Shown here in pieces: positions 3,658 to 48,042 of a stretch of 64,000 nucleotides of DNA. The position numbers were made by a program, and so were the translations under genes. The stretch covers positions 17,050,001-17,114,000 of the forward strand of contig NC_073384.1 in the NCBI RefSeq assembly GCF_028641065.1. The letters run 5' to 3'. How positions within the stretch are numbered: the first letter of the stretch is position 1; each line of letters begins with the position of its first letter. Origin of the DNA: Leucoraja erinacea (Eukaryota). The notes under the pieces are model-generated. The model saw only the letters and a list, made by a program, of their open reading frames with translations. It was not told the DNA's origin and searched no databases.

Positions 3658-4003
3658 TTGCAAATCCTCCGATCCTGATCCAATTCCCGAGGCTGGAGCG
3701 TGTCACTGAGGGTCCACACGGCACGGTTACGGTGCTCCATGGAGAACGCTGAAGTGGGAAACACTGACGTCCACTGGTACCGAGAATTACCCGGGCAGGA
3801 CATGGAGTGGGTTTTAACACACGAGGCAGGAGGCAGCGTACGAAGGAGACCAGGCTTCACTGAGCGGTTCCAGCTGTTCAAAGACGCCTCCAACAGCAGC
3901 TTCATCCTGACGGTCACAAACGTGACGCTCAATGACTCTGCCGTCTATTACTGCACAGTGTGGGGAGATATCAGAGGGAATGGAACCCAACTCAACGTAA
4001 CCA
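3658..4003 (+). pseudogene. Gene A V2a exon: VJ-type V domain with a +1 frameshift
   Basis: Acceptor ttttccctttcaag|TT and donor ACCA|gtgagt as in gene B V2, but 346 nt. An extra C at 3714/3715 (GGTCCACACG vs GGTCACACG) leads to TGA at 3750-3752. Could be a sequencing error. Confidence 0.85.
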
Positions 4004-4029
4004 GTGAGTACAAATTATAGTTGGTTTTA

Positions 4030-5720
4030 TTCATCTTTTATATTGGAAAATAATGGATGAGCTTCAAGAAGCTGAATGTTGACTTCGGGAAGGGAAAGCT
4101 AAGGGTCCATGAACCTGACTACCTCGGCAGGATGGAGGAGGAGAGAGGCCACAGCTTCATGTTCCCGAGCATACTCATCTCTGATGATCTGTACTGGGCC
4201 CACCACATCGATACAATCCCAAAGAAAATGTATCAAAGCCTCTACTTCCTCAGAGGTGTGAGGGGTATGTTGCTGAATACTCCATCGTGCACAGTAGCGA
4301 GCACACTTACTGGTTGTATCATGGTCTTGAATGCCCAAGAATAAATTAGGTTGCAGAAAGAAGTTAACATTTTTGGGGTCATTATAGATATTAACCAATA
4401 GACAATAGACAATAGGTGCAGGAGTACCAGTACCACCATTCACTGTAATCATGGCTGATCATCCAAATTCAGTACCCCGTTCCTGCCTTCTCATCATATC
4501 CCATGACTCCGCTTTCTTTAACAGCTCTATCTAACTCTTGTCTTGAAAGCATCCAGAGGATTGGCCTCCACTGCATTCTGAGGCAGAGAATTCCACAGAT
4601 TCACAACTCTCTGGGTGAAAACGTTTTTCCTCATCTCTGTTCTAAATGGCCTACCGTAATACATAAACTGTGGTCCCTGGTTCTGGACTCCCCCAACATC
4701 GGGAACCTCCCAGATGTTAAAGTGATGTACAGGAACGACTGCTTCTAGAAGGCAGTTAGAAACATAGAAACATAGAAAATAGGTGCAAGAGTAGGCCATT
4801 CGGCCCTTCGAGCCTGCACCGCCATTCAATATGATCATGGCTGATCATCCAACTCAGTATCCCGTACCTGCCTTCTCTCCATACCCCGTGATCCCTTTAG
4901 CCACAAGGGCCACATCTAACTCCCTCTTAAATGTAGCCAATGAACTGGCCTCAACTACCTTCTGTGGCAGAGAGTTCCATGAGATTCACCACTATGAAAA
5001 GGTAATGAAAATTGGTTTCTCACCTCGGTCCTAAAGGATTTCCCCTCTATCCTTAAGCTGTGACCGCTTGTCCTGGAATTCCCCAACATCGGGAAGAATC
5101 TTCCTGCATCTAGCCTGTCCAACCCCTTAAGAATTTTGTAAGTTTCTATAAGATCCCCCCTCAATCTCCTAAATATCATCAGGGACTACTGTATACTGTG
5201 TTTTACCGAGACATGGCTCCCCCTGCCTCACCTGATTGTGCCATTCAACCTGAGGGCTTCTCACTACTCAGGCAAGATTAAAGATGGATCAACTAAAGTT
5301 GATCAAAAGTTGATTAAAGATGGTTACTTTTTAATTAATTCCGCCTGGTCGCTTGGACGTGACTGTCCTGGCGAGCTCCTGCTCCCCAGAACTGGAATCT
5401 CTTACAGTGAAGTGTTTTCCTTACTACCCCTACTGTGGGAATTCACTTAGGCTCTCCTGACAGCAGTCCACATCCCGCCCCAGGATGATGGTAAGTTTGC
5501 ACGAGGAACTTCACACTTTAACCCAGTCTTGAAACGGTATCCCGAGGATTTGTTCAGATAATTGTCTGGGACTTCAAAATATTATCAGCAAGTCTCCTGC
5601 CCAACCAGAGGCCCTTGGACACTGCTGCACAGCCATACAGATGCATACTGTTCAATACCTAGACCACACTTCAGTAAATCTGATCACCAGGCTGTGTTTT
5701 TACTTCTTACTTACAAGCGG
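4030..5720 (+). mobile_element. Rex1/L2-like LINE fragments interrupted by two antisense CR1 3' ends (about 4396-4712 and 4757-5180)
   Basis: LYFLR...LTGCI and CFTETWL...SDH-type remnants. The CR1 ends show FTQRVVNLWNSLP and (ATTGTCT)n/(TTCTATGT)n tails. Confidence 0.7.
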
Positions 5721-5918
5721 ACTTACAAACTTACAAACAAAAGGAGTCTGGGCGACTTCCACAACTCTCCATTTGTTGGGATTGACTGTTTTTTAAGCTC
5801 ATTAAACTCTCCGATACATTTCTTCACCAGTACTGATTTCATTTGCCTCCTTGCCCAGGAATTAATGTCTAATGCTGTCTTTGAGTAAGGTAAGTTACAT
5901 TTTGTAAGTCCCAAACTT

Positions 5919-6220
5919 TAGTTTAGTTTAGTTTACAGATATATTGTAGCATGGAAACAGACCCTTCGACTCGCCGGTCCACGCCGACCAGCGATCACCC
6001 GTACACTGATTATAACCTACACACTCGGGACAATTTATAGAAGCCAATTAACCTACAAACCTGCACGTCCTTGGAATGTGTGAGGAAACCGGAACACCTG
6101 GAGGGAACCCACACATCCCCAGGGAGAACGTGCAAACTCCATACAGCCATCACTCATAGTCAGAATAAAACACGGGTCTGTGGCGCTGCAAGGCAGTAAC
6201 TCTACCACTGCGCCACTGTT
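5919..6220 (-). mobile_element. tRNA-derived V-SINE (HE1-like); further copies at about 13404-13718, 18010-18280, 18720-18897, 20350-22267 (split by Tc1) and 41665-41765
   Basis: tRNA-like head GTGGCGCAGTGGTAGAG...CCCGGGTTCGATCC, V-core GGAGTTTGTACGTTCTCCCCGTG and (CTAAA)n tail. Confidence 0.8.
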
Positions 6221-6280
6221 TTAAATAATTTCTAGCAACCCTTATATTCCAATGATAACCTATGATATCCTTCTTTAAAG

Positions 6281-6625
6281 ATGCAAATCCTCCAATCCTG
6301 ATCCAATTCCCGAGGCTGGACCATGTCACTGAGGGTCACACGGCACGGTTACATTGCTCCATGGAGAACGCTGAAGTGGGAAACACTGACGTCCACTGGT
6401 ATCGAGAACTACCTGGGCAGGACATGGAGTGGGTTTTAACACACGAGGCAGGAGGCAGCGTACGAAGGAAACCAGGCTTCACTGAGCGGTTCCAGCCGTT
6501 CAAAGACGCCTCCAACAGCAGCTTCATCCTGACGGTCACAAACGTGATGCTCAATGACTCTGCCGTCTATTACTGCACAGTGTGGGGAGATATCAGAGGG
6601 AATGGAACACAGGTCAATGTCACTG
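6281..6625 (+). CDS. Gene A V2b exon: intact VJ-type V domain
   Basis: Acceptor ccttctttaaag|AT, donor ACTG|gtaagt, 345 nt, phase 1-1. Motifs LHC, HWYR, DSAVYYC, WGDIRGNGTQVNVT (ORF 6262..6669). Confidence 0.92.
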
Positions 6626-8044: not shown

Positions 8045-8179
8045 TTTCTCAAACAAAGGAGAATCAAGTTGTGATGATGTACCTTGCCTGGATCATTCTA
8101 CCTTTGGTGCTGGGAGTTCTTGCTGTTACTGGAGCCATTTGCCTCATCAGATGCAGAGCTTCTGGAAGCCACCAGTCCT
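8045..8179 (+). CDS. Gene A transmembrane exon (SQTKENQVVMMYLAWIILPLVLGVLAVTGAICLIRCRASGSHQS)
   Basis: Acceptor tttatttgcag|TT, donor T|gtatgt, 135 nt, phase 1-1, hydrophobic helix. Confidence 0.88.
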
Positions 8180-8346: not shown

Positions 8347-8420
8347 CCCAGTCCGGAGCAGCTGATGATCAGACCCCAGGAGCAGATTATGAAAACATTT
8401 CCGTGGCAAGAAATGTCCCG
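8347..8420 (+). CDS. Gene A cytoplasmic exon 1 (SQSGAADDQTPGADYENISVARNVP)
   Basis: Acceptor ctctttttcacag|CC, donor CCG|gtgagt, 74 nt, phase 1-0. Confidence 0.85.
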
Positions 8421-12922: not shown

Positions 12923-12964
12923 AATTCAGGAGATCACCAGGCAGATCCAAACACCATCTACATG
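12923..12964 (+). CDS. Gene A cytoplasmic exon 2 (NSGDHQADPNTIYM)
   Basis: Acceptor gttgtgttgtag|AAT, donor ATG|gtaaga, 42 nt, phase 0-0. Confidence 0.8.
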
Positions 12965-14129
12965 GTAAGAAATGTGACGTTTTGGACTCTGAAACATTTC
13001 ACTGAGCACGAGTTGCCAAGCTGCTGTTTCCAACATTTCTGTGTTTTCCGCTAGGATTTGCAAAGACCCACTCAGTCCATCTACGGTCATATCCAAGGTA
13101 CGTTCCAGTAACTGTTGACTGTTGCACCATATGATATCTGTTACCTGTGCAGATATGGCGAGACTGCAGGGAAGCTTCAGACAGGAACAACCAGCATGAA
13201 GGTGGGCCCAAAGGAGCTCAGTCTGATAACGGGTTTGGTGTAGAGAGTAAATTAACACCCATCATCGAGTCAGATCATTTAGTTATGAAAATACATCCTT
13301 GCAATTCTGGTAATGTTCGGTATCTAATCCAGGAGAAGGGAACCAGTGCAATTATATTTTTAATTCATTATCTCACCTTGGTTTTAGGATTAAGCAAGCT
13401 ATTTAGTTTAGTTTAGTTTAGAGATACAGCGCGAAAACAGGCTGTTCGTCCCACTGACTCCGCGCCGACCAGCGATCCCTGCACATTAATACTATCCCAT
13501 ACACACTAGTGACAGTTCACATTTACACCAAGCCAATTATTCCACAAACCTGTACATCTAGGATGTGTGGGAGGAAACCAAAGATCTTGGAAAAAAACCC
13601 ACGCAGGTCACAGCGAGAACGTACAAACTCTGTACAGACAGCACCATAGACAGGATCGAACCCGGGTCTCTGGCACTGTAAAGTAGTAGTTATACCACTG
13701 TGCCACCGTGCCGCCCATTGTCTCTGACCTTTCCAACAGCTGTTCCATGAATTGTTTGGGTTGGAAGGTAGTGATCAAGGTAATGCTCACAATCCCAGTC
13801 CACGTCCTGCCCCATGAACGTCGGTGATCGTTCACAGTGATTTCAAGGAGAGGGCATCTAACTTCTCCAAGATCTTTGTTTTGACCATTTGTACCTGAAC
13901 TACTGTCAGGACGCAGCAGGTTTCAATTATCTGGGCAAATCGTCACAAATTGGATTAAGTTCCTTCAGTTTAGACGGTGAAATTGTGATCTTACTGAAGT
14001 GGGTAAACATTTTAGTGGGTTCTTTATGCTGGAGAGAATGACGCCACTGGAGTGGCTATGAGTCCAGAACACAAGGGTGCAACAACATTAGAGCCCACTT
14101 CTTCAGGGTGATGTCAGGAAACTTAGTTT

Positions 14130-15810
14130 AGTTTGGTACAGTGCACATTATCTGCATGGAATTTAGCAAGGCCATTGACAAGATCCCCCACGGAAAGCCG
14201 GTCCAGAAGATTACATCACAAGGGATCCCGGGCAAGCTAGCCAATTGGATACAAAATTGGCTTGGTGGCAGGTCAGATGCTGATGGTGGAGGGTTGCTTT
14301 TCAGATTGGAGTCCAGTGATATGTCGTAGGGATTGGTGCTGAGTCTACTGTTGTTCATCATCTATATTAGCGATTTGGATGAGAATGTAGGTGGAAAGGT
14401 TAATAAGATTGTGGATTACAGCAAAGTGAATGGATAATGAAAAAAAGTTAATTAAGAAAACAACATGATCTAGATCAACCGGGAAGGTGGGCCAAGGGAT
14501 GGCAGATGATTTAACTCAGAAAAGTAGGCCAAAGACTGGTAGATACAATGGCGGGACTGACATATGATGAAAGAATGGGTCTACTGGGCTTATATTCACT
14601 CGTGGGGTGGAAGGTTGCAACCTTCACGTGATCCGCACGGTTTCGACTAATGCAATCAACTCGACGTGCACAAACGGAAGATCAAATAGAACAAGTTATC
14701 CAACAACTTTAGGCTGTGCACGCCACACAAAAGAAGAAGAAGATATTCGCTAGAATGCCGGAATAATGTTCCCCATGTTGGGGGAGTCCAGAACCAGGCG
14801 TCATAGTTTTGGCCATTTAGGACTGAGATGAACAAAAACTTTTTCACCCTGAGAATTGTGAATCTGTGGAATTCTCTGCCACGAAAGGCAGTGGAGGTCA
14901 ATTCACTGGATGTATTGAAGAGAGAGTTAGATATGGCTCTTAGGGTTAATGTAGTCAAGGGATATGGGAAGAAAGCAGGAACAGGGTACTGATTCTGGAT
15001 GATCAGCCATGACCAAATTGTATGGCGGTGCTGGCTCGAAGGGCCGAATGGGCAACTCCTGCACCTATTTTCTATGTTTCTAATTTAACTCGGAAAAGTG
15101 TAAAGTGTTGAATTTTGGTAAATTACACAAAGGCAGGCATTACATTCAATGATAAACCTTCAGAGTGTTTTAGCACAGAAATATAGAACACATTATTTCT
15201 GAAAGTGGTGACGCAGTTTGACAAGGTTGCATGTATGCCTTCATTTGTGAGTTGGTGAGGACAAGTGTTAGGATGTTACAATTGTGCACAACATTGGTAA
15301 GACCGCACTTGGAGTACTGTGAACAGTTCTGATCATCTAAGTAACAGAAGGATGATATTAAATTGGAAAGTGTGAAGAAAAGATTCACATCAATGTTAGC
15401 AGGACTTGAAGGCTTGACTTACAAGGAAAAGCTGGATAGTCTGAGGCTGCTTTCATTAGAGTGTAGGAGACTTTGAGGTGACATTATGGTGGTTAATGGA
15501 TAAGGTGAATTGTCACATTGTTTTTCTCCAGAAGAGAGTTTAAAACTAGAGGGCATAAATTTAACGGAGATGGGAAAGACTTAAAGGAGATTTGCGGGGC
15601 AACAGAGGCTGATGGGTATTTGGTACTAACAGCCAAAGTGGAAGAGAAGTGTGCAATTACAATGTTTCAAAAATAGATCCATGGATCCTACATTTTCAGT
15701 GGGATATGGGCCACATGCTGGTAGGTTGGACTAGATCAGGTAGGCAACTTGTTCAGCATTGAGAGGTTGGGCCGAAGGGCCTGTTTCCATGCTAGGCACC
15801 ATTATGACTC
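14130..15810 (+). mobile_element. Degenerate CR1 RT/3' region with nested younger CR1 end (about 14520-15082) and a short (GAA)n-tailed insertion (14601-14742)
   Basis: FSKAIDKIPH...LANWIQNWL remnant. The short insert is flanked by ATATTCACT/ATATTCGCT. Confidence 0.75.
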
Positions 15811-16381
15811 AGTGGGAATGTGTATCCCTCTCTCAGATAATCAGAAATTCCAGCATTGACCAAAAATTGATTTTTGTTGGGTTTGAGTTTCAGATGTGGA
15901 CAGAGATGGGTGATTAGAGTTGAGATAAGTCAGTCAGTTGATCAAATAACAGGAGAGACGTGAGGGTCGAATGGCCTGTTCTTCACATCCACTTTGCCTC
16001 CCCTTGACACAGAGTGTTCACTGCTCCATGCACCAGCGTTGAGGGTTGCTGATTGAGCCTCTAGTCAAGGCCACTTCCGTCCATGTCCCCTGCAACCAGC
16101 AGCAGCCCAGGGCAGTGGTGAGGACTGGCCATGTGAACTAGTTCCTTGTACCTGACCACACACCAGGCTCAGGAACAGCAGAGGCCACGCAGCCCTGAGA
16201 CCCAACCTCTGTGTTTAGATACTCGATGGAACGGTTCAGGCAATGTCTAGAACCGACTTTAACTCACACGTTGGAAGACACAGAGTGCTGGAGTAGCTCA
16301 GCGGGTCAGGAAACCTCTGGAGAACTTGGAGAGTGGATGTTTTTGGTTGGGAAACCTTAAACAGACACTAACATTCTTTGC

Positions 16382-16612
16382 CTTTAAGAAGGAACTGCAG
16401 ATGCTGGAAAATCAAAGGTACACAAAAATGCTGGAGAAACTCAGCGAGTGCAGCAGCATCTATGGAGCTAAGGAAATAGGCAACTTTTCGGGCCAAAACC
16501 CTTCTTCAGACCCTTCTTCGTCTGAGGAAGGGTTTCGGCCCGAAACGTTGCCTATTTCTTTCGCTCCATAGATGCTGCTGCACCCGCTGAGTTTCTCCAG
16601 CATTTTTGAGTA
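16382..16612. mobile_element. Palindromic non-autonomous Penelope-derived mini-element
   Basis: Back-to-back inverted pLTR halves, each with a hammerhead-like core. 15-bp TSD ACTAACATTCTTTGC at 16367-16381 and 16613-16627. Confidence 0.85.
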
Positions 16613-16673
16613 ACTAACATTCTTTGCTTGTTTGTTTTACGTAAATACTTTCTGTTTAATTTTGTTTAAGCAG

Positions 16674-16739
16674 GTAGTAAACGCACGTCCTACAGCTGAA
16701 CCACAGCTGGAATCTGTCTCTGCAGTCTCGTCTGGATAA
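16674..16739 (+). CDS. Candidate terminal exon of gene A (VVNARPTAEPQLESVSAVSSG*)
   Basis: Polypyrimidine tract and NAGNAG acceptor ttttgtttaag-cag|GTA; a homologous acceptor is present in gene B at 32339. Would complete TIYM-VV (or TIYM-QV). Confidence 0.35.
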   Translation, partial: VVNARPTAEPQLESVSAVSSG

Positions 16740-19700
16740 AGGAAGCTTGGATGGATTTCTGCACAGGCAAACACATCAGATGTGCAACGTTTTAAGGCCC
16801 AGATATTCCATTTCAATTATACATTGTTGTCTCATGCACCTAGGCACTGTGTAATGCTTTGTTTTGCAGACAACCCAGTAAAATCATACATCGGACCTCA
16901 CCTGGGCAGTACACAAGTGTGGCCATGTTTTTGGCACCGTCAAAGTCACAAAAGTTCACCGAACAGTCCTATCTTCTACCTCCCCCCTTCCCCCCTCCCC
17001 CACTGCCACATCCCCCTTCATTCTCAGTGGCCCCCTCCACCTAGTCCCCCTGTTTTACCCTGTTCTTGGCAGCCTTCCTCGCTCAACGGCGGCCTCCTTT
17101 GGCTCTCCAACGGCTATCCGATGGTGTGACAAGAGAACTCTATCCAAAGCAATATCCTTCCTGGCGGCGGATGGAGATCAAAAGGTGAAAGGTCATCGAG
17201 ACCGAGCTGCTCAAGGTCCCGTTTGGAGACATTTCATCACATCACAGCCAATGGGAATGTAATTGTCATAGATTCATAAAGTGAAATAGCCCAGACACAG
17301 GTCCTTCCGCCCAACTCGTCCATACCCACCAGGGTGCTTATCTCAGCAAGTCCCATTTCCCTGTATTTGGCCCATATCCTCAAAACCATTACTATCCATG
17401 GACCTGCTCAACTTGAAGCATTGCGGTCATACCCACTTCTACCATTTCATTTTGCACTGCGCTCCACACACTCACCACCCTCTGCTTGAATAACTTGCCC
17501 CTCAAAACCCCTTTAATTATTTTTCCCCTCTTACCTTAAAACTTTGCCCTCTAGTTTTACATTTCCCAGATTTTGGGGCGTGTGAACCTTATCTATGCTC
17601 CTCCTGTCCTCTAGGAAAACAATCCCAACATATCCAATCTCTCCGTATAACTCATACCTTACAATCCCATCAACCTCCTTTGTAAATCACTCCTACACCC
17701 TTTCCAGAGTTAGTGAGGCAGGTCAAATAGCCCTGCAGCTGCAGCATTTCTGAGTCCTACATGTCATTGTGGTCAAGACATGACACTCGTTCTTTGAGCA
17801 GATGTTATTGATGTTTTAAATACCATGCATAAACATACATAAAAGTGATTCTGGTGTTTCTTAATATCATTACCGATAAGGAGCAATGTTTCATAGATTA
17901 TCAAAGGAAGGGTGTGATGTGTCACTTAAGTATTAGCATGGAGCAACGTTAAGAAGCAAAGGAGAAGTGGTGCTAAGATCAGAAATGGAAAGAGACGGTG
18001 TTATTTTTTTAGTTTTTAAGATACAGCGCGGAAACAGGTCCTTCGGCCCATGCCGACCAGCGATCTCTGCTCATTAACACTACTCCACGCACACTGGGGA
18101 CAACTTCCCATTTAGACCAAGACAATTACCCTACAAACCTATACATCTTTGGAGTGTGGGAGGAAACCAAAGATCTTGAAGAAAACCCATGCAGGTCACG
18201 GGGAGAACGTACAAACTCCATACAGACAAGGATCGAGCCTGGGCCTCTGGTGCTGCAAGGCAGTAGCTCTACCACTACGACACTGGACTTGAGAAAAGAT
18301 AACTGGGACAGAACAGTTTTCTACCCTCCAAAGATGAGACCCTATGCAAGCAAACACAAGAATATTGGAGCAGCAGTACGCCACATGGCCCCTCAATCCT
18401 GCCCCACCATTCAATATAATCTGACCACCGCTCTCAATCCCTCACATATTCAAACCTTCTCCGACATCTACTTTAAATAATCTGGTCTCTGCAACTCTCT
18501 ACGGTAAAAACATTCACCACCCTATGTGAGAATAGTGCATACCTCAGCTTTAAACAATCACTCTCTGACCTTGAAACTGTGTCCCCTTGTTTGAGATTTT
18601 CCCTTTGGTGAAAACATCTCATCATCCACCCTCTCTCTCCATCCCCTCCCCCTTCCCAGTTCTCCCACCAGTCTAACTGTCTCTGACTACATTCTATCTC
18701 TGCCCCCCCCCCCTGCCTAATCTGCAAACCCGCACGTCTTTGGGATGTGGGAATAAATTGGAACACCCGGAAGAAACCCACACAGTCTCAGGGAGAACGT
18801 ACAAACTCCACACAGACAGTACCCGAGGTCAGGATCAAATCCAGGTCTCTTACACTGTGAGGCAGTATCTCTACCAGCTGTGCCACTGTGCTGCCCAATT
18901 ACATCCAACATGATTAAAGCCCACTTATGCCAACTTCCTGTTTTCTATTTGAGGACCAGCTTTAAATCCTTCCTAAAATTCACCCTGTAATACAATGTGC
19001 ACCATCTTTAGTGTCAAATGCCTTTAGAAATGTAAATACTCTCTATCTACAGGGTCTCCTCCCTTCCCTCTGCTTGTAACATCCTCAAAAAATACAAAAG
19101 AATACACACAAAATAAGATCATGTTGACATGGATTAATTAAATCAAACCTTCCTAAATGATGAGCTATTTCTTATTTCACTCAGTGAAGGGATGAGGGCT
19201 TTGCAGGGTGAGATAACTTTTCATTAACCATCCCTCATTGCCCTTGAGAAGAGCTGAACACTATGATCCTGGAGGTCATAACGTCATAAGTGATTGGAGC
19301 AAAATTAGGCCATTTGGCCCATCAAGACTACTCCACCATTCAATCATGGCTGATCTATTCTCTTCCCCTCAACCCCTATTCTCCTGCCTTCTCCTCATCG
19401 CCCCTTTCACCTGTACTAATCAATGTACACCCACAATGCTATGAGGGAGAGAGAGTTCTAAGTTGTTGAACCAGCAATGGTGAAGGAACATCGTTATTTT
19501 TCCAGGTCAGGATGATGTGTGGATTGGAACACAACTTCTAGGTGGGTGGCGTTCCCATGCTTTTGCTGCCCTTGTCCTTCTATCTGGGAGAGATTGAAAG
19601 GTCCAGGGTTGGGCAGGTGCTGCAGAAGGAGTCTTGATGAGTTGCTGCAATGTATCCTGAAGATGCTACAATCCACTGCTACTGTGTACCTGTGGTGGAG

Positions 19701-20428
19701 TGGGTGAATGTTGAGGATGGTTCAATGGTTTTTTTATTCAAGATTCTCCATCACCCTCAAACAGCTCAGCCCACTGACCAAAGTCCCTCTCCTCGCCTGT
19801 CCGTCTCTGTGTCTCAGGGAACACTTATTGCAGCTGACCCTGAAGGTGCTGGAGTCAACATCCCTGCCTCTCTGCTACCAGCCCAAACCGTTCTATTCTC
19901 ACCCATAAGGTTAAAGGTAAAGTGCTGTGAATTGGAAGAGATAGGGATCTGTGGCAGGTATCCCCATTACCACCAGAGGGCAGTGCTGTTCCATTATTTC
20001 ATTTGAATTGTTATTTTTCCAAAGATACATTTTATTCTGCTTATCAATCTCCAAAGTGATCTTAAGTGGTTCTCCACTTACCAATGAAATTGCAATATAA
20101 GCATTTTGGATCATAGTTTTTCCCAATTCAAAGCATGATATTTTAACCTTCCTAATATAGGCCGGGACTGCAATAGTTTTAAAGGCTTAGATGGGATGGA
20201 ATGTGTTGAATGTGTTCAGAATGGTTTCACCACACATAATAGAGGACTCTGCTATGGAGAGGGCAGGGCTTAACCTACTCTTGGGAAATAGAACAAGTGA
20301 CTGACGTGTCAGTGAGGTAGTGCTTTGGAAAAATGATCAGAGGTCTATTAGTTTAGTTTGGTTTAGTTTAGACAGTGCGGAAACAGGCCCTACACAAGCC
20401 TACACACACTGGAGACTATTTACACATA

Positions 20429-22053: not shown

Positions 22054-22749
22054 TATACCTAGTATGCAAACCAAAGCCAATTAACCGACAAACCTGTACG
22101 TCTTTGGAGTGAGGGAGGAAACCGAAGATCTCGGAGAAAACTCATGTGGTCACGGGGAGAACGTACAAACTCCGTAGGGACAGCACTTGTGTTCGGGATT
22201 GAACCCGGGTCTCCAGCGCTGCAAACAGTGTAAGTCAGCAACTCTACCTGCGCCACCGTGCCGCCCCATTTTAAAATAGCTATGGAAAAGAACTGATCTG
22301 ATCACAATTTAAGTTTTAAATTAGGGCAAGGCTAATTTTAACAGTGTTAGTCAAGAGCTTGCAAAGGTTAATTGGAGTAAGATGTTTGCTGGCAAACACA
22401 CAATTGATCCATTACAATTCACCCAGCAACAAAACAGATCCTTGGCAGACACCATCTCCCTGGCCCGACACACATTTGTATTGATATTAGTTTATTATTA
22501 ACCCGTGTACTGAGAGACAGTGAGAAAACGTTGTTTTGTGTGCTATCCATGCAAATCATACCACACATGAGTACAATCACACCAGGCACAAGTACAACAG
22601 GGAGTGCAAAAATATCAAGCGTACAGAATACAATGTTACAGACACAGAGAAAGTCCAAATAAAATTGTACAATGTACCTACCGAAGTGAGTAGGTTGGGA
22701 GATCGAGACTATAACATTATTATGTACTTCCAAGCTATCTTTGAGTCCT

Positions 22750-27535: not shown

Positions 27536-27581
27536 TAATAAATGTCTCTTGGGTCATACATAAAGCGAATGGAACCTCTGG

Positions 27582-29799: not shown

Positions 29800-30008
29800 T
29801 GTAGATGAGATATGCATGTGCCTTTAATATAGTTACCTCATCACTACTAACCACTCTCCATATCACAAGTATAATTACAACCTCCCCACCCACATATCGC
29901 TCTCTAGTTTACGTGACAGACCACGTACAGCTAGTGCTCTCTTTATAAAATACAGTATGAATAAAATGAAGTAAAGTTACAGTGTGTCGCTATCACTTCT
30001 TTACTACT
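29800..30008 (+). mobile_element. Solo LTR related to the LTR at 62945-63162, inserted in CR1 ORF2
   Basis: Starts TGTAGATG and shares ACCTCATCAC and AATAAA...TACAGTGTGTC with 62945-63162. CR1 sequence resumes at about 30008. Confidence 0.75.
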
Positions 30009-32230: not shown

Positions 32231-32338
32231 CTATACCTTTAGATGTCTGACGTGTCTGCCTGTGCAGATATCATCCAATCTTCCGTCATCTAAACGAGGA
32301 CACTGAGACAGTTCAGCTGTGGGATGCTTATTTGCTTC
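32231..32338 (-). CDS. Candidate terminal exon of gene B (EANKHPTAELSQCPRLDDGRLDDICTGRHVRHLKV*)
   Basis: Acceptor ttttctttaaacag|GAA at a position homologous to the gene A candidate (16674). The stop falls at the junction with the CR1 3' tail. Weakly supported. Confidence 0.3.
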   Translation of the reverse strand, partial: EANKHPTAELSQCPRLDDGRLDDICTGRHVRHLKV

Positions 32339-32889
32339 CTGTTTAAAGAAAATTAAACAAAACCCAGTTACACAAAGCAAAATGGTGAAGAATGCATGTC
32401 TGAAGGGTCATCTGTTCATGTTGTCCAGAGATGCTGCCCGACCCCCAGTGATAATACAGCACTTTCTGTGCTTCAATGCACGAGTTCAAATCAGTTCCAG
32501 TCATTGCCCGAACTGTTCCGTTGAGTGTCTGAACACAGGCCCAATCTATGGTATGTATCTCTGTTCTCGAATAATGTTGAGCCCCATGGGATCTTAAAGT
32601 CACAGTCACAGTCATGGTCACAGAGCTATATAGCATGGACTGGGCTTAAGCCCACCTTGTCCATGTCATCCAAGTTGTCATTCTGGGCTAATTCCACTTA
32701 CCTGCATTTGGCCCTCTCAACCCTTCCTATTCAAATATCACTTTATCCATGTCCCTCATCATCTTGAACACCACAATAAGACCGACAACCCCACAGACTC
32801 CTATGCTCCAAATATGAAAGTTCCAGCCAATGCACCTCTCCTTCGAGATTTGCCGCCCGACCAAGTTGCTGCTCTCTGCCCAGCATAGT

Positions 32890-33710
32890 CAGGTGAATTC
32901 CCGGGATGGCAGAACTGACATATGATGAAAGAATGGATTGACTGGGCTTATATTCACTGGAATCTAGAAGGATGTGAGGGAATCTTATAGAAACATATAC
33001 AATTCTTAAAGGATAGGACAGGTTAGATGCAGGAAAAATGTTCCTGGTGTTGGGGGAGTCCAGAACCAGGGGTCACAGTTTCAGAATAAGGGGTAGGCCA
33101 TTTAGGACTGATCTGAGGGGGTGGAAGATTGCGACCTTCACGTGGTCCGCCCTGTTTCGACAAATGCAATCAAGCCGGCATGCACAATCAAATAAGATCA
33201 ATAGAACAAGTTCTTGCCATAGAGGTAGTACAGAGAAGGTTCACCAGACTGATTCCTGGGATGGCAGGAGTTTCATATGAAGAAAGACTGGATAGACTTG
33301 GCTTGAAGTCGCTAGAATTTAGAAGATTGAGGGTGATCTTAAAGAAACTTACAAAATTCTTAAGGGGTTGGACAGGCTAGATGCAGGAAGATTGTTCCCA
33401 ATGTTGCCAAAGGATCCCAAAATTCCCCAGTTTAAGGATAAGGGGGAAGTCTTTTAGGACCGAGATGAGAACATTTTTTTTCACACAAAGAGTGGTGAAT
33501 CTGTGGAATTCTCTGTCACAAAAAGTAGTTGAGGCCAGTTCATTGGCTACATTTAAGAGGGAGTTAGATGTGGCCCTTGTGGCTAAAAGGATCAGGGGGT
33601 ATGGAGGGAAGGCAGGTACAGGATACTGAGTTGGATGATTAGCCATGATCATATTGAATGGCGGTGCAGGCTCGAAGGGCCGAATGGCCTACTCCCACAC
33701 CTATTTTCCA
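32890..33710 (+). mobile_element. CR1 3' fragments (two, tandem), with a short repeat at about 33117-33210
   Basis: VQRRFTRLIPGM and FFTQRVVNLWNSL motifs. Confidence 0.85.
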
Positions 33711-35807
33711 CAGCGCATTCCGAAAGTATTCAGACCCATTCACTTTTTCCACATTTTGTTATGTTACAGCCTTATTTTAAAATGGAGTAAATTCATTTTT
33801 TTCATCATCAATCTACACACAATACCCCAGAACGAAGAAGCAAAAACTGGTGTTTAGAAATTTTTGCAAAGTATTTAAAAATAAATAACTGAAATATCAC
33901 ATTTACATAAGTATTTAGACCCTTTGCTTTGACACCCAAAATTGAGCATAGGTTCATCCTGTTTCCATTGATTATCCTTGGGATGTTTCTACAACTTGAT
34001 TAGAGTCCATCAGTGGTAAATTAAATTGATTGGACATGATTTGGAAAGGCACACACCTGTCTATATAAGGTCCCCCAGTTGACAGTACTTCAGAGCAAAA
34101 ACCAAGCCATGAAGATGAAGGAATTGTCCGTAGACCTCCGAGACAGAACTGTGTCGAGACACAATAGACAATAGACAATATGTGCTGGAGAAGGCCATTA
34201 GGCCCTTCGAGCCAGTACCACCATTCAATGTGATCATGGCTGATCATCCCCAATCAGTAGCCCATTCCTGCTTTCTCCCCACATCCCCTATCTAGCTCTC
34301 ACTTGAAACCAGCCAGAGAACCTGCCTCCACCTGAGGCAGAGAATTCCACAGACTCACCACTGTCTGTGAGAAAAAGAGTTTTCTCGTCTCCGTTCTAAA
34401 TGGCTTACTCCTTATTCTTAAAGATCTGGGAAGGGTATAAAATAATCTCTGCAGCATTGCAGGTCCCGAAGAGCACAGTGGCCTCAGTCATTCTTAACTT
34501 TGGAACCACCAGGACTCTTCTGCCACAGAGGGTAGTTGAGGCCAGTTCATCTGCCACAGAGGGTAGTTGAGACCAGTTCATTGGCTATATTTAAGAGGGA
34601 GTTAGATGTGGCCCTTGTGGCTAAGGGGATCAGGGGGTATGGAGAGAAGGCAGGTACGGGATACTGAGTTGGATGATCAGCCATGATCATATTGAATGGC
34701 GGTGCAGGCTCGAAGGGCCGAATGGCCTACTCCTGCACCTAATTTCTATGTTTCTATGTTTCTATGTTTCATAGAGCTGGCTGCCCGGCCAAACTGAGCA
34801 ATCGGGTGAGAAGAGCCTTGGTCAGGGAGGTGACCAAGAACCCGATGGTCACTCTGACAGATCCCCAGACTTCCTCTGTGGAGATGGAAGAACCTTCCAG
34901 AAGGACAACTATATCTGCAACATTCCACCAATATGATAGATTGGTCAGACGGAAGCCACTCCTCAGTAAAACGCACATGACAGCCCGCTTGGAGTTTGCC
35001 AAAAGGCATGAGAAACAAGATTCTCTGGTCCGATGAAACCAAGATTGAACTCTTTGGCCTGAATGCCACGCATCATGTCTGGAGGAAACCAGGCTCCGCT
35101 CATCACCTGCCCAATATCATACCTACCGTGAAGTATGGTGGTGGCAGCATCATACTGTGGGGATGTTTTTTAGCGGCAGGAACTGGGAGACTATTCAGGA
35201 TCGAGGGAAAGATGTATGGAACAAAGTACAGAGATTTCTTTGATGAAAACCTGCTCCACAGCGTCCTGGACCTCAGACTGGGGCGGAGGTTTACCTTTGA
35301 ACAGGACAACAACCCCAAGCACACAGCCAAGACAACGCAGGAGTGGCTTCGTGACAAGCCTGTGAATGTCCTTGAGTCGCCCAACCAGAGCCCGGACTTG
35401 AACCCGATCGAACATCTCTGGAGAGACCTGAAAATAGCTGTGTACCGATGCTCCCCATCCAACCTGACAGAGCTTGAGAGGATCTGCAGAGAATAATGGG
35501 AGAAATTATCCAAATACATGTGTGCCAAGCTTGGAGCGTCATACCCAAGAAGACATGGCTGTAATCGCTGCCAAAGGTGCCTCAACAAAGTACTAAAGGA
35601 TCTGAATACTTATGTATTGTGATGTTTCAGTTATTTCTTTTCAATTACTTTGCAAATTTTTCTAAACACCTGCTTTTGCTTTTTTATTATGGGATATTGT
35701 GTGTAGATTGATGATAAAGAAATGAATTTAATCCAGTTTAGAATAAGGCTGTCACACAACAACATGTGGAAAAAGTGAAGGGTTCTGAATACTTTCTGAA
35801 TGCACTG
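33711..35807 (+). mobile_element. Tc1-like DD34E transposon, defective, with two nested CR1 3' ends (about 34163-34422 minus, 34519-34770 plus)
   Basis: TIRs CAGCGCATTCCGAAAGTATTCAGACCC / GAATACTTTCTGAATGCACTG-TA. WSDETK...QDNNPKH...PDLNPIE with 34 residues between D and E. Confidence 0.93.
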
Positions 35808-36404
35808 TATGCACTTTCTATGTTCTATGTTCTATGTTTCTATAGAGAACCCATTAAAATCGAGAACACTTCAGTAAGACCCCACTTTCACCACAATACT
35901 GAAGGCAACTTAAGTCTTGTAACTTTTGCCCAAAAAAATTAACCCTGCTTCACCCTGACGGTAATTAAGGTAAGAATGAGGTTGAGTTCTTGCTTAGTGA
36001 CAGATGCCCTCTCTCTGATGTCATTGTGACCAATCACTGAAGGATGTGGTCAGGGAATGCGAGTTTCATCTTGATCACTATCGTCTAATCCCCAACAATT
36101 CACGGAACAGCTTTTGTTAGAAATGTCAGAGACAATATCTGAAACCACGATGGGATAATGAATTAGAAATTGACTTGCTCTGGATCTTTTCACCCGGATT
36201 AAATACTCAGTGTTACCAGGATTCCAAGGCTGTGTGTTCATAGCCAGTTAATCCTACTCCGTGATGGGTGTTAATTTACTCTCTGAACCAAACATGTAGT
36301 CAGACTGAACTCCTGTCGGCCCATCTGCACGCTAGTCATTCTTGCCTGAAACCTCAACCTTTCTGCAGCAGTTGACAGATATCACATGGTGCAGATGCGT
36401 CATA

Positions 36405-37342: not shown

Positions 37343-37511
37343 CGATAGTAGTCATTGTCAACAGTTACTGGAACGTACCTTCGAGATGACCGTAGATGGA
37401 CTGAGTGGGTCTTTGTAAATCCTAGCAGAAAACACAGAAATGTTGGAAACAGCAACTTAGCAACTCGAGCTCATCGAAACGCTTCAACGTCTTAAATTGT
37501 ACTTTTCTTAC

Positions 37512-37553
37512 CATGTAGATGGCGTTTGGATCTGCCTGGTGATCTCCTGAATT
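37512..37553 (-). CDS. Gene B cytoplasmic exon 2 (NSGDHQADPNAIYM)
   Basis: Acceptor gttgtgttgtag|AAT, donor ATG|gtaaga, 42 nt, phase 0-0. Differs from paralog 12923-12964 at 1 nt. Confidence 0.8.
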
Positions 37554-39799: not shown

Positions 39800-39873
39800 C
39801 GGGACATTTCTTGCCACGGATATGTTTTCATAATCTGCTCCTGGGGTCTGATCATCATTCACTCCAGACTGGG
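39800..39873 (-). CDS. Gene B cytoplasmic exon 1 (SQSGVNDDQTPGADYENISVARNVP)
   Basis: Acceptor ttctctatttcacag|CC, donor CCG|gtgagt, 74 nt, phase 1-0. Contains YENI. Conserved in paralog 8347-8420. Confidence 0.85.
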
Positions 39874-40038: not shown

Positions 40039-40173
40039 AGGACTGGAAGCTTCCAGATGCTCTGCGTCTGATGAGGCAAATGGCTCCAGTAACAGCAAGA
40101 ACTCCCAGCACCAAAGGTAGAATGATCCAGGCAAGGTACATCATCACAACTTGATTCTCCTTCGTTTGAGAAA
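40039..40173 (-). CDS. Gene B transmembrane exon (SQTKENQVVMMYLAWIILPLVLGVLAVTGAICLIRRRASGSFQS)
   Basis: Acceptor ttctttgcag|TT, donor T|gtatgt, 135 nt, phase 1-1. Uncharged hydrophobic stretch followed by RRR stop-transfer. Paralog at 8045-8179 differs at 5 nt. Confidence 0.88.
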
Positions 40174-45590: not shown

Positions 45591-46379
45591 CATACTATGT
45601 GAACATACATGGAGCTTAATGGAAAGCATCATATTTTTCCAGCATTTAGTGTATAACAGATTCTAAAATTTGAATCCAACCACATACTGCCCAGGGAGGC
45701 TCAGGATAATTGAAGAGTAAGATTATCGAGGATGTCAGATATATACGTTCTCTGGACTTGCTGGCTGATCTTTTAAGTTACTCTTAAAAGGCTTGTGCCT
45801 TTTTTAAAAATATATATTGATTGCCTTCTAAACTGCTCATTCAATCTACATGTTTATCTTAAGTTATTTTGTGTATGGGAACACCCAGATTCTTCTGACA
45901 TTACAGTCTAACAACATTCAAAAAAATACTTTGCATGTGTGTTTTTCTTACAGAAGTGAATGATTATATTTTTCCAAGATATAGTCCATCTGGCTTGTCC
46001 TGCTCTTTATACTTGCCTGTGCCCCCTGCAGCCTCCTCACATGTTGCATCACCTACCAACTAACCTGGATATGTTATACATGATCTCCTCATCCTCGATT
46101 GTGAACAGAGAGGGTCCCAGCACCAAACCCTGCACCACCAATCACTAGTCACAGCCTCTCAGCTTGAATACCTGCTGCTAATTCTAGTTCCTCCAGGAGA
46201 TTCTTCCATCTATGTGTCTGCTTGTGATGAATAATGGTCAATCTCATCTACAGCTACTGTCTCCGTATGGCTCATTGAAAAACCCAACCCTACTTTGCTA
46301 GTTACAAACATCTAACAATGTGAGCTTTAAAATATTCCTCAACCATGATGTCTATTTCATACATCCACGTTGACCCTAT

Positions 46380-47150
46380 TCAAAGGTATCAAAGGTATTT
46401 TATTAGTCACATTCACATACACCCAGGTGTAGTGATGTGAAATGCTTTTTGCCATTTTGCAGCACACAAAAAAAGAATACAGACATAACACCAATAAGAG
46501 TCTTAAACACAAAGAACATCCCCCCACCATGGCTCCCACCATGAGGGAAGGCACAAAGTCCAGTCCCCAACCCCAGTTCACCCATAGTCGGGCCCATTGA
46601 GGCCTCAACAGTTGCCTCTATGGAGGCCCGATGTTCCAGGCCGTTCTCGCCGGGTGATGTAGCTCCGGCGTCGGGAGAGTCCTCCCAGCGGCTTGGGAAC
46701 CCTGGAACAGCCGCTTCCGCACTGGAGGCCGCGCCTTCCGAAGCCAACAAGGCCGCGCCGGTTGGAGCTCCACAACTGGCGATCTCATCTAGAGATCCCA
46801 GGCTCCCGTTGTTAAGTTCAGCGCCGCCGCCCGCAGCTGGTCACTCCACAGTCCCGCAGCTCCTCGATGTTTTACCCGGCGGTCTCAGCTCACCGGAGCT
46901 CCAGCGCGGCGACCCGGGCAAGGCATCGCCCACTCCGCGATAGCGCTCCAGCGCTGTGCCGCCGCCGAAGCATTGGTTCTGGATGATCCGCGACAGGAAA
47001 TGCCGCTCCAGGCCCGCTGGTAGGCGGCGAGGACGGGTCGAAGCTGCAGCCCGGAGAAAAGCTGCCTCTCCGACCAGGTAGGGACCCTGAAAGGTAGTTT
47101 CCTGGAGGCACCCCGGGACACAAAGATGGCCGGGCGAGGAGAGGAGAGGG
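46380..47150 (-). mobile_element. GC-rich retroposon-like repeat of a related family, with a (TACCTTTGA)n-type tail
   Basis: 3' region resembles 26225-27148 and 36405-37342 (TGTGCCTTCC...ATGGTGG...AATGTGAC.AATAAA). Confidence 0.55.
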
Positions 47151-47697
47151 ACATCGGTTTGTTGGAACTACTCCAGTACAACGAGCTGTAGGCTGACCGG
47201 ACGTTGCACTTTGAATGATCATGACGCCAAAACATGGCAGTGCCAGCATGTGTAATATATGTAAAACTAAATTCACTGCCCAGTTGCATATGTAACAAAT
47301 AAAGAACTATTGAACCATTGAAATAAGGAGGCAGCATTGGTTAATCTAAAGCCATGACAAGTTGTAGTTCTGCTCTCCTGTACCTTAACTCAAACAGATG
47401 TGAGCAGTGCCATGCTATTACACTGAGCACTGAACACTATTTCTAGTTTTCTCTACATTGAAGAACACACTGCACATTGAAATTTATTTCCCACAACCCA
47501 GATCTGACATCAGTTACCGTATCAGTGCTCACACCATTAGTGAGGGGCCACAATGTATTGGTCTCCAAAATCAGGGCTCCAGTATTATCTCCTTAATCTT
47601 TCAGTAATTCCGGCTCATGTGCCTAATCAAGGGAAGTGAATTACACCCAATATAGTTACACATGGGTGGAATAAAACCAACAATAATTTGTACTCAC

Positions 47698-48042
47698 TGG
47701 TTACGTTGAGTTGGGTTCCGTTCCCTCTGACATCTCCCCACACTGTGCAGTAATAGACGGCAGAGTCATTGAGCGTCACGTTTGTGACATTCAGGATGAA
47801 GCTGCTGTTGGAGGCGTCTTTGGACGGCTGGAACCGCTCAGTGAAGCCTGGTCTCCTTCGTACGCTGCCTCCTGCCTCGTGTGTTAAAACCCACTCCATG
47901 TCCTGCCCGGGTAGTTCTCGGTACCAGTGGACATCAGTGTTTCCCACTTCAGCGTTCTCCATGGAGCACCGTAACCATGCCGTGTGACCCTCAGTGACAC
48001 GCTCCAGCCTCGGGAATTGGATCAGGATCGGAGGATTTGCAA
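47698..48042 (-). CDS. Gene B exon 3: V-set Ig domain V2 (VJ-type)
   Basis: Acceptor ttttccctttcaag|TT, donor ACCA|gtgagt, 345 nt, phase 1-1, open. Motifs LRC, HWYR, DSAVYYC, WGDVRGNGTQLNVT. Confidence 0.93.

What the first reader, a model, noticed from the sequence alone, without database searches (positions are those of the whole stretch)
3658..48042. Tail-to-tail inverted pair of receptor paralogs with different V-exon content
Gene A (+) and gene B (-) converge and share the TM exon (5/135 nt differences), cyt1 (6/74) and cyt2 (1/42). They also share intron blocks (about 7380-8620 vs 38090-40930; about 12880-13135 vs 37360-37590). A has two V2-type exons before the TM; B has V1 plus a single V2. 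Symmetric phase 1-1 V exons allow modular gain or loss of domains. Inference: part of a multigene cluster of paired receptors evolving by birth-and-death.
Basis: partly seen in the sequence, partly recalled or inferred. Interest (0 to 1): 0.75.

Follow-up and report, generated by a model that had tools for sequence, protein, structure and literature searches.

The report
Inverted pair of skate immune-receptor genes
Two neighbouring little-skate genes for cell-surface immune receptors built from antibody-tip-like domains lie tail to tail as an old inverted duplicate; one is intact and the other may be damaged, which is an ordinary layout for such gene clusters in a receptor family that no paper seems to describe.

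Summary
Genes A (+) and B (-) converge.

Additions and corrections:
- Both genes have two more shared 3' exons (cyt3 and a terminal exon).
- Gene B is complete. Its leader exon lies at 61849-61798, 12.5 kb upstream of V1.
- Gene A's first V2 exon (V2a) carries a one-base insertion at 3714 that breaks the frame. Short-read contigs could neither confirm nor refute it.
- Gene A has also lost the stop codon that B uses.
- The largest "shared" blocks in the spacer are transposons, not part of the duplication.

Both genes carry the same tail: an uncharged TM, a YENI motif and a YxxL-x7-YxxI/L pair with ITAM spacing. They are therefore not an activating/inhibitory pair with each other. A little-skate relative, LOC129699364, has nearly the same outer domains and an ITSM/ITIM tail, so "paired receptors" fits the family rather than this pair.

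Thorny-skate proteins of A-type and B-type suggest the duplication predates that species split. The V2a/B-V2 exon is far more alike than the flanking introns, which points to gene conversion.

This scan has already noted the family on other DNA of this genome. Six literature searches found no paper describing it. No RNA evidence was obtained.

The parts
3658..4003 (+). Gene A, V2a exon: V-set domain with fused J motif. It is 346 nt, with one extra base at 3714 that shifts the frame.
   Evidence: Alignment of the three V2 exons. tblastn hits split between two frames at 3713/3715. Translation runs into stops. Pfam V-set E 2e-15 on the downstream frame. Two of 2 X1 short-read contigs over 3714 lack the base, but at about 200-430x word depth against 22-35x for single-copy DNA.
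6281..6625 (+). Gene A, V2b exon: 345 nt, phase 1-1, open reading frame.
   Evidence: Pfam V-set E 1.6e-16. 94% identical to the third domain of thorny-skate P0011.
8045..8179 (+). Gene A, stalk and transmembrane exon: 135 nt, with no charged residue in the membrane span.
   Evidence: 5/135 differences from B.
8347..8420 (+). Gene A, cyt1 exon: 74 nt, carries DYENI.
   Evidence: 6/74 differences from B.
12923..12964 (+). Gene A, cyt2 exon: 42 nt, ends with the first tyrosine of the pair (TIYM).
   Evidence: 1/42 differences from B.
13055..13097 (+). Gene A, cyt3 exon: 43 nt (DLQRPTQSIYGHIQ). It completes YMDL-x7-YGHI.
13181..13416 (+). Gene A, terminal exon. The stop codon that B uses reads CAG here, so the frame runs on for about 79 codons.
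   Evidence: ORF listing (open frame to 13413).
61798..61849 (-). Gene B, leader exon: MFALIFSILSLSLCAVG, GTAAGT donor, phase 1.
   Evidence: tblastn with family leaders gives 88% identity to P0011's leader. Sequence read.
48937..49299 (-). Gene B, V1 exon: 363 nt, phase 1-1.
   Evidence: Pfam V-set E 1e-11. 100% identical to P0012, 84% to thorny-skate P0001, 72% to P0011.
47698..48042 (-). Gene B, V2 exon: 345 nt, phase 1-1.
   Evidence: Pfam V-set E 7e-16.
40039..40173 (-). Gene B, stalk and transmembrane exon.
39800..39873 (-). Gene B, cyt1 exon (DYENI).
37512..37553 (-). Gene B, cyt2 exon.
37379..37421 (-). Gene B, cyt3 exon (YMDL-x7-YGHL).
36332..36345 (-). Gene B, coding part of the terminal exon (GKND then stop).
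13417..36331 (.). 22.9 kb spacer between the two 3' ends. It is transposon-rich and holds no family exon.
   Evidence: Pfam hits: DDE_3 transposase copies at 20731-21051(-) and 34981-35493(+); LINE endonuclease and reverse transcriptase at 28961-31672. Zero tblastn hits of 8 family proteins outside the known exons at E<=0.05. No N in the window.

Best explanation
This is a genuine, old inverted (tail-to-tail) duplication of one gene of a cartilaginous-fish family of type I membrane receptors.

The ectodomains of this family are strings of germline-joined V-J immunoglobulin domains, one per phase 1-1 exon.

Gene B (61849 to 36332, minus strand) is intact. Its exons are leader, V1, V2, an uncharged transmembrane exon, and a four-exon tail. 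The exon lengths sum to 355 codons.

Gene A, within the window, has V2a, V2b, TM and the same tail. A is either a three-V version of the receptor or a decaying copy, because V2a is frameshifted in this assembly and the ancestral stop codon is lost.

Inferred mechanism, not shown here. Ligand binding by the V-J domains clusters the receptor. Src-family kinases phosphorylate the tail pair YMDL-x7-YGHI/L, which has ITAM spacing, and the upstream YENI. A Syk-type tandem-SH2 kinase and a Grb2-type adaptor are then recruited, giving an activating signal from the receptor's own tail with no charged-TM adaptor.

Inhibitory relatives with almost the same outer domains and an ITSM/ITIM tail (for example little-skate LOC129699364) would oppose it.

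After the duplication, the V2a/B-V2 exon was kept nearly identical by gene conversion while the introns diverged.
For: - Inverted collinear homology over about 10-12 kb per arm.
- All B exons are open in the expected phases, with AG/GT borders.
- V-set Pfam hits for all four V exons.
- 10, 56 and 96 family proteins were listed in three searches. Every organism named in those rows is a shark, ray, skate or chimaera; one row (P0006, a 'eukprot' entry) names none.
- P0012 (NCBI LOC129699366) is 100%/99% identical to B's V1/V2.
- Both genes carry the ITAM-spaced pair. It recurs in 23 of 113 fetched family proteins from many sharks and rays. 28 of 113 carry the other, ITSM/ITIM-type tail, and only 1 of 113 has a charged TM core.
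- Intron differences are 15-19% in distal blocks and 24% at the 3' end. TE content differs between the arms.
- B lacks any V2b relic.
- Thorny-skate P0011 (V1-V2-V2-TM, 'SHQS' after the TM as in A) and P0001 (V1 84% to B against 72% for P0011; its first exon maps to 56906-56835 upstream of B's V1) look like orthologues of A and B.
- Synonymous differences between V2a and B-V2 are 3.5 of 80 sites, against 147 of 900 in distal introns, Fisher p 0.001-0.005.
- An independent DNA sample (X10) holds single-copy intron pieces of arm A at >=98% identity.
Against: - No RNA support. In the one RNA run laid (X24, about 5% of it read), depth was zero on V2a, V2b and TM. A single read fell in the cyt1 bin, and it carries gene B's (or another paralogue's) letter at 8399.
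- The NCBI model of B (P0012) stops by reading through the V2 donor and has no TM. That may mean no spliced transcript was seen.
- I found no NCBI protein for gene A among the little-skate hits. Only P0012 and P0078 appeared.
- A has a frameshift and a lost stop codon.
- Neither the inverted orientation nor the spacer was checked with long reads.
- The ITAM reading rests on motif spacing only. The same tyrosines sit in ITSM-like (TIYMDL in A) and ITIM-like (SIYGHI/L) contexts.
- V2-domain identities across species are too close (89-97%) to give clean orthology.
Confidence: 0.8

Rival explanations
1. One working gene plus a relic. Gene A is a decaying or 5'-separated copy, so the 'pair' is gene B and a pseudogene. 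The extra V exon then has no functional meaning.
For: - V2a carries a +1 frameshift with an early stop.
- The stop codon that B and other family members use is lost in A, giving an extension of about 79 codons.
- No little-skate protein model matching A appeared in two searches covering 133-721 aa.
- No RNA reads fell on A's exons.
Against: - V2b, TM and cyt1-3 are open with intact splice sites.
- dN/dS against B is 0.28 for V2b and 0.43 for TM to cyt3, so there was purifying selection over most of the divergence.
- The V2a exon is symmetric (phase 1-1), so it could be skipped without breaking the frame.
- The frameshift is unsupported by short-read contigs and could be a long-read consensus error.
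- The thorny-skate A-type protein P0011 has an intact V2a.
Confidence: 0.4
2. The tail is inhibitory or dual rather than activating. The two tyrosines would act as ITSM (TxYxxL) and ITIM (SxYxxI/L) and recruit SHP-1/2 or SAP-type adaptors.
For: A reads NTIYMDL and QSIYGHI, and B reads QSIYGHL. These also fit the ITSM/ITIM consensus, which I cite from recall. Earlier notes of this scan called tails of this family inhibitory.
Against: - The tyrosines are 11 residues apart (YxxL-x7-YxxI/L). That is ITAM spacing. By recall, tandem ITIM/ITSM pairs usually lie 20-30 residues apart.
- B has A, not T, at the -2 position of the first tyrosine.
- The family has a separate, clearly different ITSM/ITIM tail type with its own TM, in 28 of 113 proteins. 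That makes a second inhibitory type less economical.
Confidence: 0.25
3. Assembly artefact, or two alleles left uncollapsed and joined in inverted orientation.
For: The orientation and the 22.9 kb spacer were not tested with long reads. The family is multi-copy: word depth over the V2 exons is 6-10 times single-copy, and such regions are prone to mis-joins. A perfect 239-nt inverted repeat sits at 10810-12649.
Against: - The arms differ by 15-24% in introns, far more than alleles would.
- The arms have different TE insertions.
- Exon content differs, and B has no V2b.
- B has its own V1 and leader.
- There is no N in the window.
- Distinct A-type and B-type proteins exist in an independently assembled skate.
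Confidence: 0.03

Closest known systems
Unnamed cartilaginous-fish tandem V-J receptor family (NCBI 'uncharacterized protein LOC...'; some members auto-named IgSF2/3-like, SIRP-alpha-like, pIgR-like or JAM-like)
   Same: Same V1 and V2 domain types, leader, TM and tail. P0012 is the annotated product of gene B. 83-97% identity to the V1 and V2 domains of skate relatives and 45-68% to sharks, rays and chimaera.
   Different: Nothing essential. This locus adds the inverted arrangement, a corrected model for B (true leader exon, TM and tail) and a possibly broken A.
Mammalian paired Ig-like receptor clusters (KIR/LILR, SIRP, CD300). What I state about them is recalled, apart from the abstracts listed.
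   Same: Clustered paralogues with very similar ectodomains and opposite tail types. Evolution by duplication plus homogenisation of the ligand-binding exons (abstract of PMC3210942 seen in the listing).
   Different: In those families the activating members have short tails and a charged TM that binds an ITAM adaptor. Here the TM is uncharged (1 of 113 family proteins has a charged TM core) and the ITAM-spaced motif is in the receptor's own tail. The domains are all V-J type, not C2/I or V-C1-C1.
Teleost NILT and NITR families
   Same: Non-rearranging V-type Ig receptors in multigene clusters. NILTs have one or two V-type domains and either an ITAM or ITIMs in their own tail (abstract of PMC3022915, listing). 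By recall, NITR V domains carry a J-like motif.
   Different: Those families are described in ray-finned fish only. The review PMC6795676 (passages read) mentions none in cartilaginous fish. NILT domains are NKp44/TREM-like. By recall, NITRs pair a V with an I-type domain and use a charged TM for activation.
Other non-rearranging V-J genes: NKp30, UrIg, PRARP (passages of PMC10751288)
   Same: V and J are encoded in one exon with no recombination signal break.
   Different: According to those passages, UrIg is VJ-C1 and NKp30 and PRARP are VJ genes of the MHC; that NKp30 has a single V domain is recalled. Here 2-3 V-J domains sit in tandem, there is no C1 exon in the window, and linkage to the MHC is unknown.
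Skate MDIR (modular domain immune-type receptors)
   Same: A multigene family in a skate with a variable number of Ig domains and activating or inhibitory forms (passages of PMC3031540).
   Different: MDIR domains are described there as CD300/TREM/pIgR-like. The domains here are antigen-receptor-like with a J motif.

Membership tests
Cartilaginous-fish tandem V-J receptor family (unnamed) | V-set domain with a fused J-like G-x-G-T-x-L/V-x-V strand, encoded in a single exon | tested here: met
   Pfam V-set E 1e-11 to 2e-16 for all four V exons. GNGTQLNV, GNGTQVNV and GDGTKLNV sit directly before the donor site.
Cartilaginous-fish tandem V-J receptor family (unnamed) | High sequence identity to annotated members, including leader, TM and tail | tested here: met
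   Searches listed 10, 56 and 96 proteins. tblastn of family proteins maps to every exon.
Cartilaginous-fish tandem V-J receptor family (unnamed) | Symmetric phase 1-1 V exons that allow the domain number to vary | tested here: met
   Exon lengths are 345, 345 and 363 nt, read in phase 1. Family proteins carry 0-5 J motifs, most often 2 (50 of 113). V2a is 346 nt and is the exception.
Paired activating/inhibitory receptors | The two members have opposite signalling motifs | tested here: not met
   A and B share the same uncharged TM and the same tail motifs. The feature is met only between B and P0078 (LOC129699364), which has PVYSTV, LYADI and TEYAAI.
Paired activating/inhibitory receptors | Near-identical ligand-binding domains in members with opposite tails | tested here: met
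   B against P0078: V1 104/120 (87%), V2 109/114 (96%). The map position of LOC129699364 was not checked by me.
Paired activating/inhibitory receptors | Shared ligand and opposite cellular effect | not testable with these tools
   Needs binding and cell assays.
ITAM-bearing receptor | YxxL/I, then 6-8 residues, then YxxL/I in the cytoplasmic tail (consensus recalled) | tested here: met
   A has YMDLQRPTQSIYGHI and B has YMDLQRPTQSIYGHL, split over cyt2 and cyt3. The motif is conserved in 23 of 113 family proteins.
ITAM-bearing receptor | Phosphorylation-dependent recruitment of Syk/ZAP-70 | not testable with these tools
   Biochemistry is needed.
NITR (teleost novel immune-type receptors) | A V domain followed by an I-type domain; activating forms have a charged TM (recalled) | tested here: not met
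   All ectodomain exons here are V-J type. The TM is uncharged. No sequence comparison with NITRs was possible. No listed hit names an organism outside the cartilaginous fishes, but the word-based search has limited reach.
SIRP family | V-C1-C1 ectodomain (recalled) | tested here: not met
   There is no C1-type exon in the window: tblastn of 8 family proteins found nothing outside the listed exons. Precomputed Pfam C1-set (PF07654) appears in only 2 listed family proteins, P0060 and P0091.
Rearranging Ig/TCR genes | Separate V and J segments with recombination signals, plus a C domain | tested here: not met
   V and J are continuous within one exon that ends at a GT donor. The next exon is another V or the TM.
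MDIR (skate) | CD300/TREM/pIgR-like Ig domains (passages of PMC3031540) | not tested
   No MDIR sequence was at hand. The best solved-structure matches of the V2 domain are antibody V domains, which argues against a CD300-like type but is not a direct test.

The most novel reading that the evidence does not exclude
Sharks, rays and chimaeras have their own large paired-receptor system built only from germline-joined V-J domains. Its activating members (such as A and B) signal through an ITAM in their own tail instead of through a charged-TM adaptor. Its inhibitory members use an ITSM/ITIM tail. The recognition exons are kept in step by gene conversion between paralogues, here between inverted ones. 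Such genes could be surviving relatives of the unsplit V-J precursor of antigen receptors.
Probability: 0.3. Interest if true: 0.75.

Novelty: new variant of a known kind. Interest (0 to 1): 0.5.

Why it matters
Paired immune-receptor clusters are well studied in mammals and bony fish, but hardly at all in the oldest jawed vertebrates.

This locus gives a clean, fully resolved example from the little skate. It has an intact receptor gene with two antibody-tip-like domains and a built-in ITAM-spaced tail, and an inverted sister copy that may be on its way out. There is also measurable exon-limited homogenisation.

If the signalling reading holds, the family shows another way to build activating and inhibitory receptor pairs, with the ITAM in cis. 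It also gives comparative immunologists concrete genes to clone.

The pair itself is ordinary for an immune gene cluster, and this scan has already flagged the family elsewhere in the same genome.

Tried and rejected
Steps that led nowhere or stayed inconclusive:

1. Thorny-skate loci. I tried to fetch the loci of P0011 and P0001 to test whether the inverted pair is conserved. Only the neighbouring LOC numbers and the protein comparisons stand.

2. Reads.
- No listed holder of the stretch was on record as RNA.
- The one bulk RNA run laid gave reads on transposon bins only.
- The two X1 contigs over 3714 lack the extra base, but they also carry C at 3787, as V2b and B-V2 do. Their depth is about 200-430x against 22-35x for single-copy DNA. 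They are therefore collapsed paralogue contigs and do not settle the frameshift.

3. Solved-structure sequence search of B-V2. There were 12532 matches and all 60 rows shown are engineered or natural antibody chains. It shows only that the domain is antigen-receptor-like and cannot rank SIRP, NITR or NKp30.

4. ESM Atlas on the TM-plus-tail part of P0024. The best scores were 0.79-0.83, below the level the tool calls meaningful. I dropped it.

5. Literature. Six answered searches and passages of three papers gave no description of this family. I did not read the little-skate genome paper.

6. Large inverted blocks I considered as part of the duplication and rejected:
- 20425-21507 / 35811-34768: DDE_3 transposase copies.
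- 26228-26891 / 37340-36668: a repeat inserted in B's cyt3-terminal intron. It breaks collinearity.
- 11-1753 / 56602-55063: 73-75% identity, and in different introns of A and B.

7. The first exon of the thorny-skate model P0001 maps to 56906-56835 with an ATG and a phase-1 donor. It is not hydrophobic, so I rejected it as B's signal exon in favour of 61849-61798.

8. I did not use the large representative protein search, structure prediction or fold search, because no claim here rests on them.

9. The spliced protein models of A and B were never sent to any search tool. Searches used single exons by reference or database proteins.

Full report
WHAT THE WINDOW IS. Earlier notes of this scan place the window in the little skate genome, inside a cluster of receptor genes built from V-J domains. 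The closest database protein, P0012, is named Leucoraja erinacea LOC129699366 and matches the window at 100% and 99%. The window has no N.

CHECK OF THE OBSERVATION. The repeat finder and a self-BLASTN show a collinear series of minus-strand matches between 3.5-13.4 kb and 48.2-36.1 kb:
- 3544-4032 / 48158-47669: 94.5%.
- 7297-8533 / 40888-39684: 87.7% over 1241 nt.
- 8559-8877 / 38153-37816: 78%.
- 12886-13119 / 37590-37357: 90%.
- 13176-13387 / 36350-36139: 76%.

I set exon borders from pairwise alignments and AG/GT sites. The interval ends given in the finding (3658 and 48042) are the first bases of V2a and of B's V2 exon. All four V exons are Pfam V-set domains. V2b and B-V2 are 345 nt, B-V1 is 363 nt, and all are read in phase 1.

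1. Two more shared exons follow cyt2. One is cyt3 (13055-13097 / 37421-37379, 3 of 43 differences). The other is a terminal exon (from 13181 / 36345).
2. Gene B's leader exon lies at 61849-61798 on the minus strand. It encodes MFALIFSILSLSLCAVG, 88% identical to the leader of thorny-skate P0011, and has a GTAAGT donor in phase 1. It sits 12.5 kb upstream of V1 (49299-48937). B's eight coding exons sum to 1065 nt, or 355 codons, and each is open in its expected phase. That length is close to full-length relatives such as P0024 (352 aa) and P0042 (355 aa). I did not send the joined model to any search.
3. The NCBI model of B (P0012) starts at an in-frame ATG inside the leader intron. It ends by reading through the V2 donor, so it lacks the TM and tail.
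4. V2a is 346 nt. It has one extra base at 3714 relative to V2b and B-V2. tblastn hits jump frame there, and the exon read in phase meets a stop soon after.
5. Where B ends with GKND and a stop, A reads CAG and runs on for about 79 codons.

WHICH BLOCKS ARE NOT PART OF THE DUPLICATION.
- The pair 20425-21507 / 35811-34768 consists of two DDE_3 transposase elements.
- A LINE with endonuclease and reverse transcriptase lies at 28961-31672.
- 4427-5174 is a repeat with many copies in the window. It showed enormous read depth.
- 26228-26891 / 37340-36668 is a repeat inserted in a B intron.
- With 8 family proteins, tblastn found nothing at E<=0.05 outside the exons listed.
- A sensitive search found no relic of V2b in B's V2-TM intron.

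The window therefore holds exactly two family genes. Their 3' ends are 22.9 kb apart.

THE FRAMESHIFT AND THE READS. I laid four runs on 3400-8500.
- Both X1 contigs that cover 3714 lack the extra base. They also read C at 3787, as V2b and B-V2 do.
- Their word depth is about 200-430x, against 22-35x in single-copy bins. They are collapsed contigs of several paralogues.
- Logan contigs drop rare paths, so the frameshift is neither confirmed nor refuted.
- X10, another sample of the same species label, holds single-copy intron pieces of arm A at >=98% identity. The arm therefore exists in a second data set.
- The RNA run (X24, oligo-dT, about 5% read) gave zero depth on V2a, V2b and TM. One read fell in the cyt1 bin, and it carries A at 8399, the letter of gene B.
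- There is thus no expression evidence, and one sparsely sampled run of unknown tissue says little either way.

WHAT THE GENES ENCODE. The V domains end in G-x-G-T-x-L/V-x-V directly before the donor site, so V and J are germline-joined. The best solved-structure matches are antibody V domains. The TM (VVMMYLAWIILPLVLGVLAVTGAICLI) has no charged residue.

The tail reads DYENI, then NTIYMDLQRPTQSIYGHI in A and NAIYMDLQRPTQSIYGHL in B. That is YxxL, seven residues, then YxxI/L, the spacing of an ITAM (consensus recalled). The same tyrosines also fit ITSM-like and ITIM-like contexts. I prefer the ITAM reading for two reasons:
- The spacing fits an ITAM.
- The family has a second, clearly different tail with its own TM and three ITSM/ITIM-type tyrosines.

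Among the 113 family proteins fetched:
- 23 have the ITAM-spaced pair.
- 28 have the second tail type.
- 62 have neither, and many of these are truncated models.
- Only 1 has a charged residue in the TM core.

PAIRED RECEPTORS? A and B have the same tail, so they are not an opposing pair. P0078 (little-skate LOC129699364) has V1-V2-V3 and the second tail type. Its V1 is 87% and its V2 96% identical to B's. The classic paired layout therefore exists in the family and probably in this cluster. I did not verify that it is the same gene.

AGE AND MODE OF EVOLUTION. Distal intron blocks differ by 15-19% (147 of 900 sites pooled), and the 3' terminal block by 24%. The exons differ by 2-8%.
- V2a against B-V2: dS is 0.045 (3.5 of 80 synonymous sites), significantly below the intron level (Fisher p 0.001-0.005).
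- V2b against either: dS is 0.13-0.16, which is at intron level.
- TM to cyt3: dS is 0.095, not significantly different (p 0.12).

This fits an old duplication followed by conversion limited to the V2a/B-V2 exon. It agrees with the separate note s1-877356 on mosaic V2 exons.

Thorny-skate proteins give an outside anchor.
- P0011 is V1-V2-V2-TM. Its third domain shares LHC, NVMLND and TQVNVT with V2b (94% identical), and it has SHQS after the TM, as A does.
- P0001 is V1-V2. Its V1 is 84% identical to B's, against 72% for P0011's V1. Its first coding exon maps to 56906-56835, upstream of B's V1.

The gene duplication and the V2a/V2b exon duplication therefore probably predate the split of the two skates. 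The V2 domains are too similar across all copies (89-97%) for firm orthology.

ARTEFACT? Uncollapsed alleles are very unlikely, for these reasons:
- The arms differ by 15-24% in introns.
- They carry different transposons.
- They differ in exon content.
- Each matches a different thorny-skate protein.

A mis-join in the spacer cannot be excluded without long reads. I give it a few per cent.

LITERATURE. Six searches and passages from three papers found no description of tandem V-J receptors with these tails in cartilaginous fish.
- PMC6795676 speaks of NITRs only in ray-finned fishes.
- PMC10751288 lists NKp30, PRARP and UrIg as non-rearranging V-J genes.
- PMC3031540 describes skate MDIRs as CD300/TREM/pIgR-like.

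The library lacks most subscription journals, and supplements were closed, so absence from print is not shown. Several earlier notes of this scan reached the same conclusion on other stretches of this genome.

LIMITS.
- Gene A's leader and V1 lie outside the window, and I know of them only from note s1-877331.
- There is no RNA support.
- The signalling mechanism is inferred from motifs alone.

Noticed in passing
window 10810-11048 and 12411-12649: A 239-nt inverted repeat, 100% complementary, flanks an ORF with a weak reverse-transcriptase match (11024-12436; RVT_1 at 23.8 bits, below Pfam's cut-off). It lies inside gene A's cyt1-cyt2 intron. It is either a very young element with inverted ends or a palindromic assembly artefact.
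   Followed up: partly
window 47630-49405 (-) and 61798-61849 (-): The public model of gene B (LOC129699366, P0012) looks mis-built. It starts at an ATG inside the leader intron and reads through the V2 donor. It therefore lacks the real leader, the TM and the tail found here.
   Followed up: yes
window 56835-56906 (-): A short ORF with an ATG and a phase-1 GT donor is 79% identical to the first 24 residues of thorny-skate model P0001. It is not hydrophobic. It is probably a mis-predicted first exon conserved only because the two skates are close.
   Followed up: partly
window 20425-21507 and 34768-35811: Two copies of a DDE_3 (Tc1/mariner-type) transposon, 86% alike, lie in opposite orientation within the spacer. 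They mimic part of the gene duplication on a dot-plot.
   Followed up: yes
window 28961-31672 (+): A LINE element with endonuclease and reverse-transcriptase ORFs lies in the spacer.
   Followed up: partly
window 27582-27809: A tandem repeat with a period of about 81 nt (93% between copies) lies inside a repetitive ORF on the minus strand.
   Followed up: no
window 11-1753 and 55063-56602: Inverted copies, 73-75% alike, of an element whose ORFs gave no clear Pfam match. They lie in different introns of A and B, so they are independent insertions and not part of the duplication. Another note of the scan (s1-877366) treats them.
   Followed up: partly
window 38153-39684: B's cyt1-cyt2 intron holds about 1.5 kb absent from A. 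It includes a low-complexity stretch that translates as PNPDPN repeats.
   Followed up: no
family proteins P0001-P0113: Only 1 of 113 fetched family proteins has a charged residue in the TM core. 23 have an ITAM-spaced pair in their own tail and 28 an ITSM/ITIM-type tail. The family seems to signal in cis rather than through charged-TM adaptors.
   Followed up: partly
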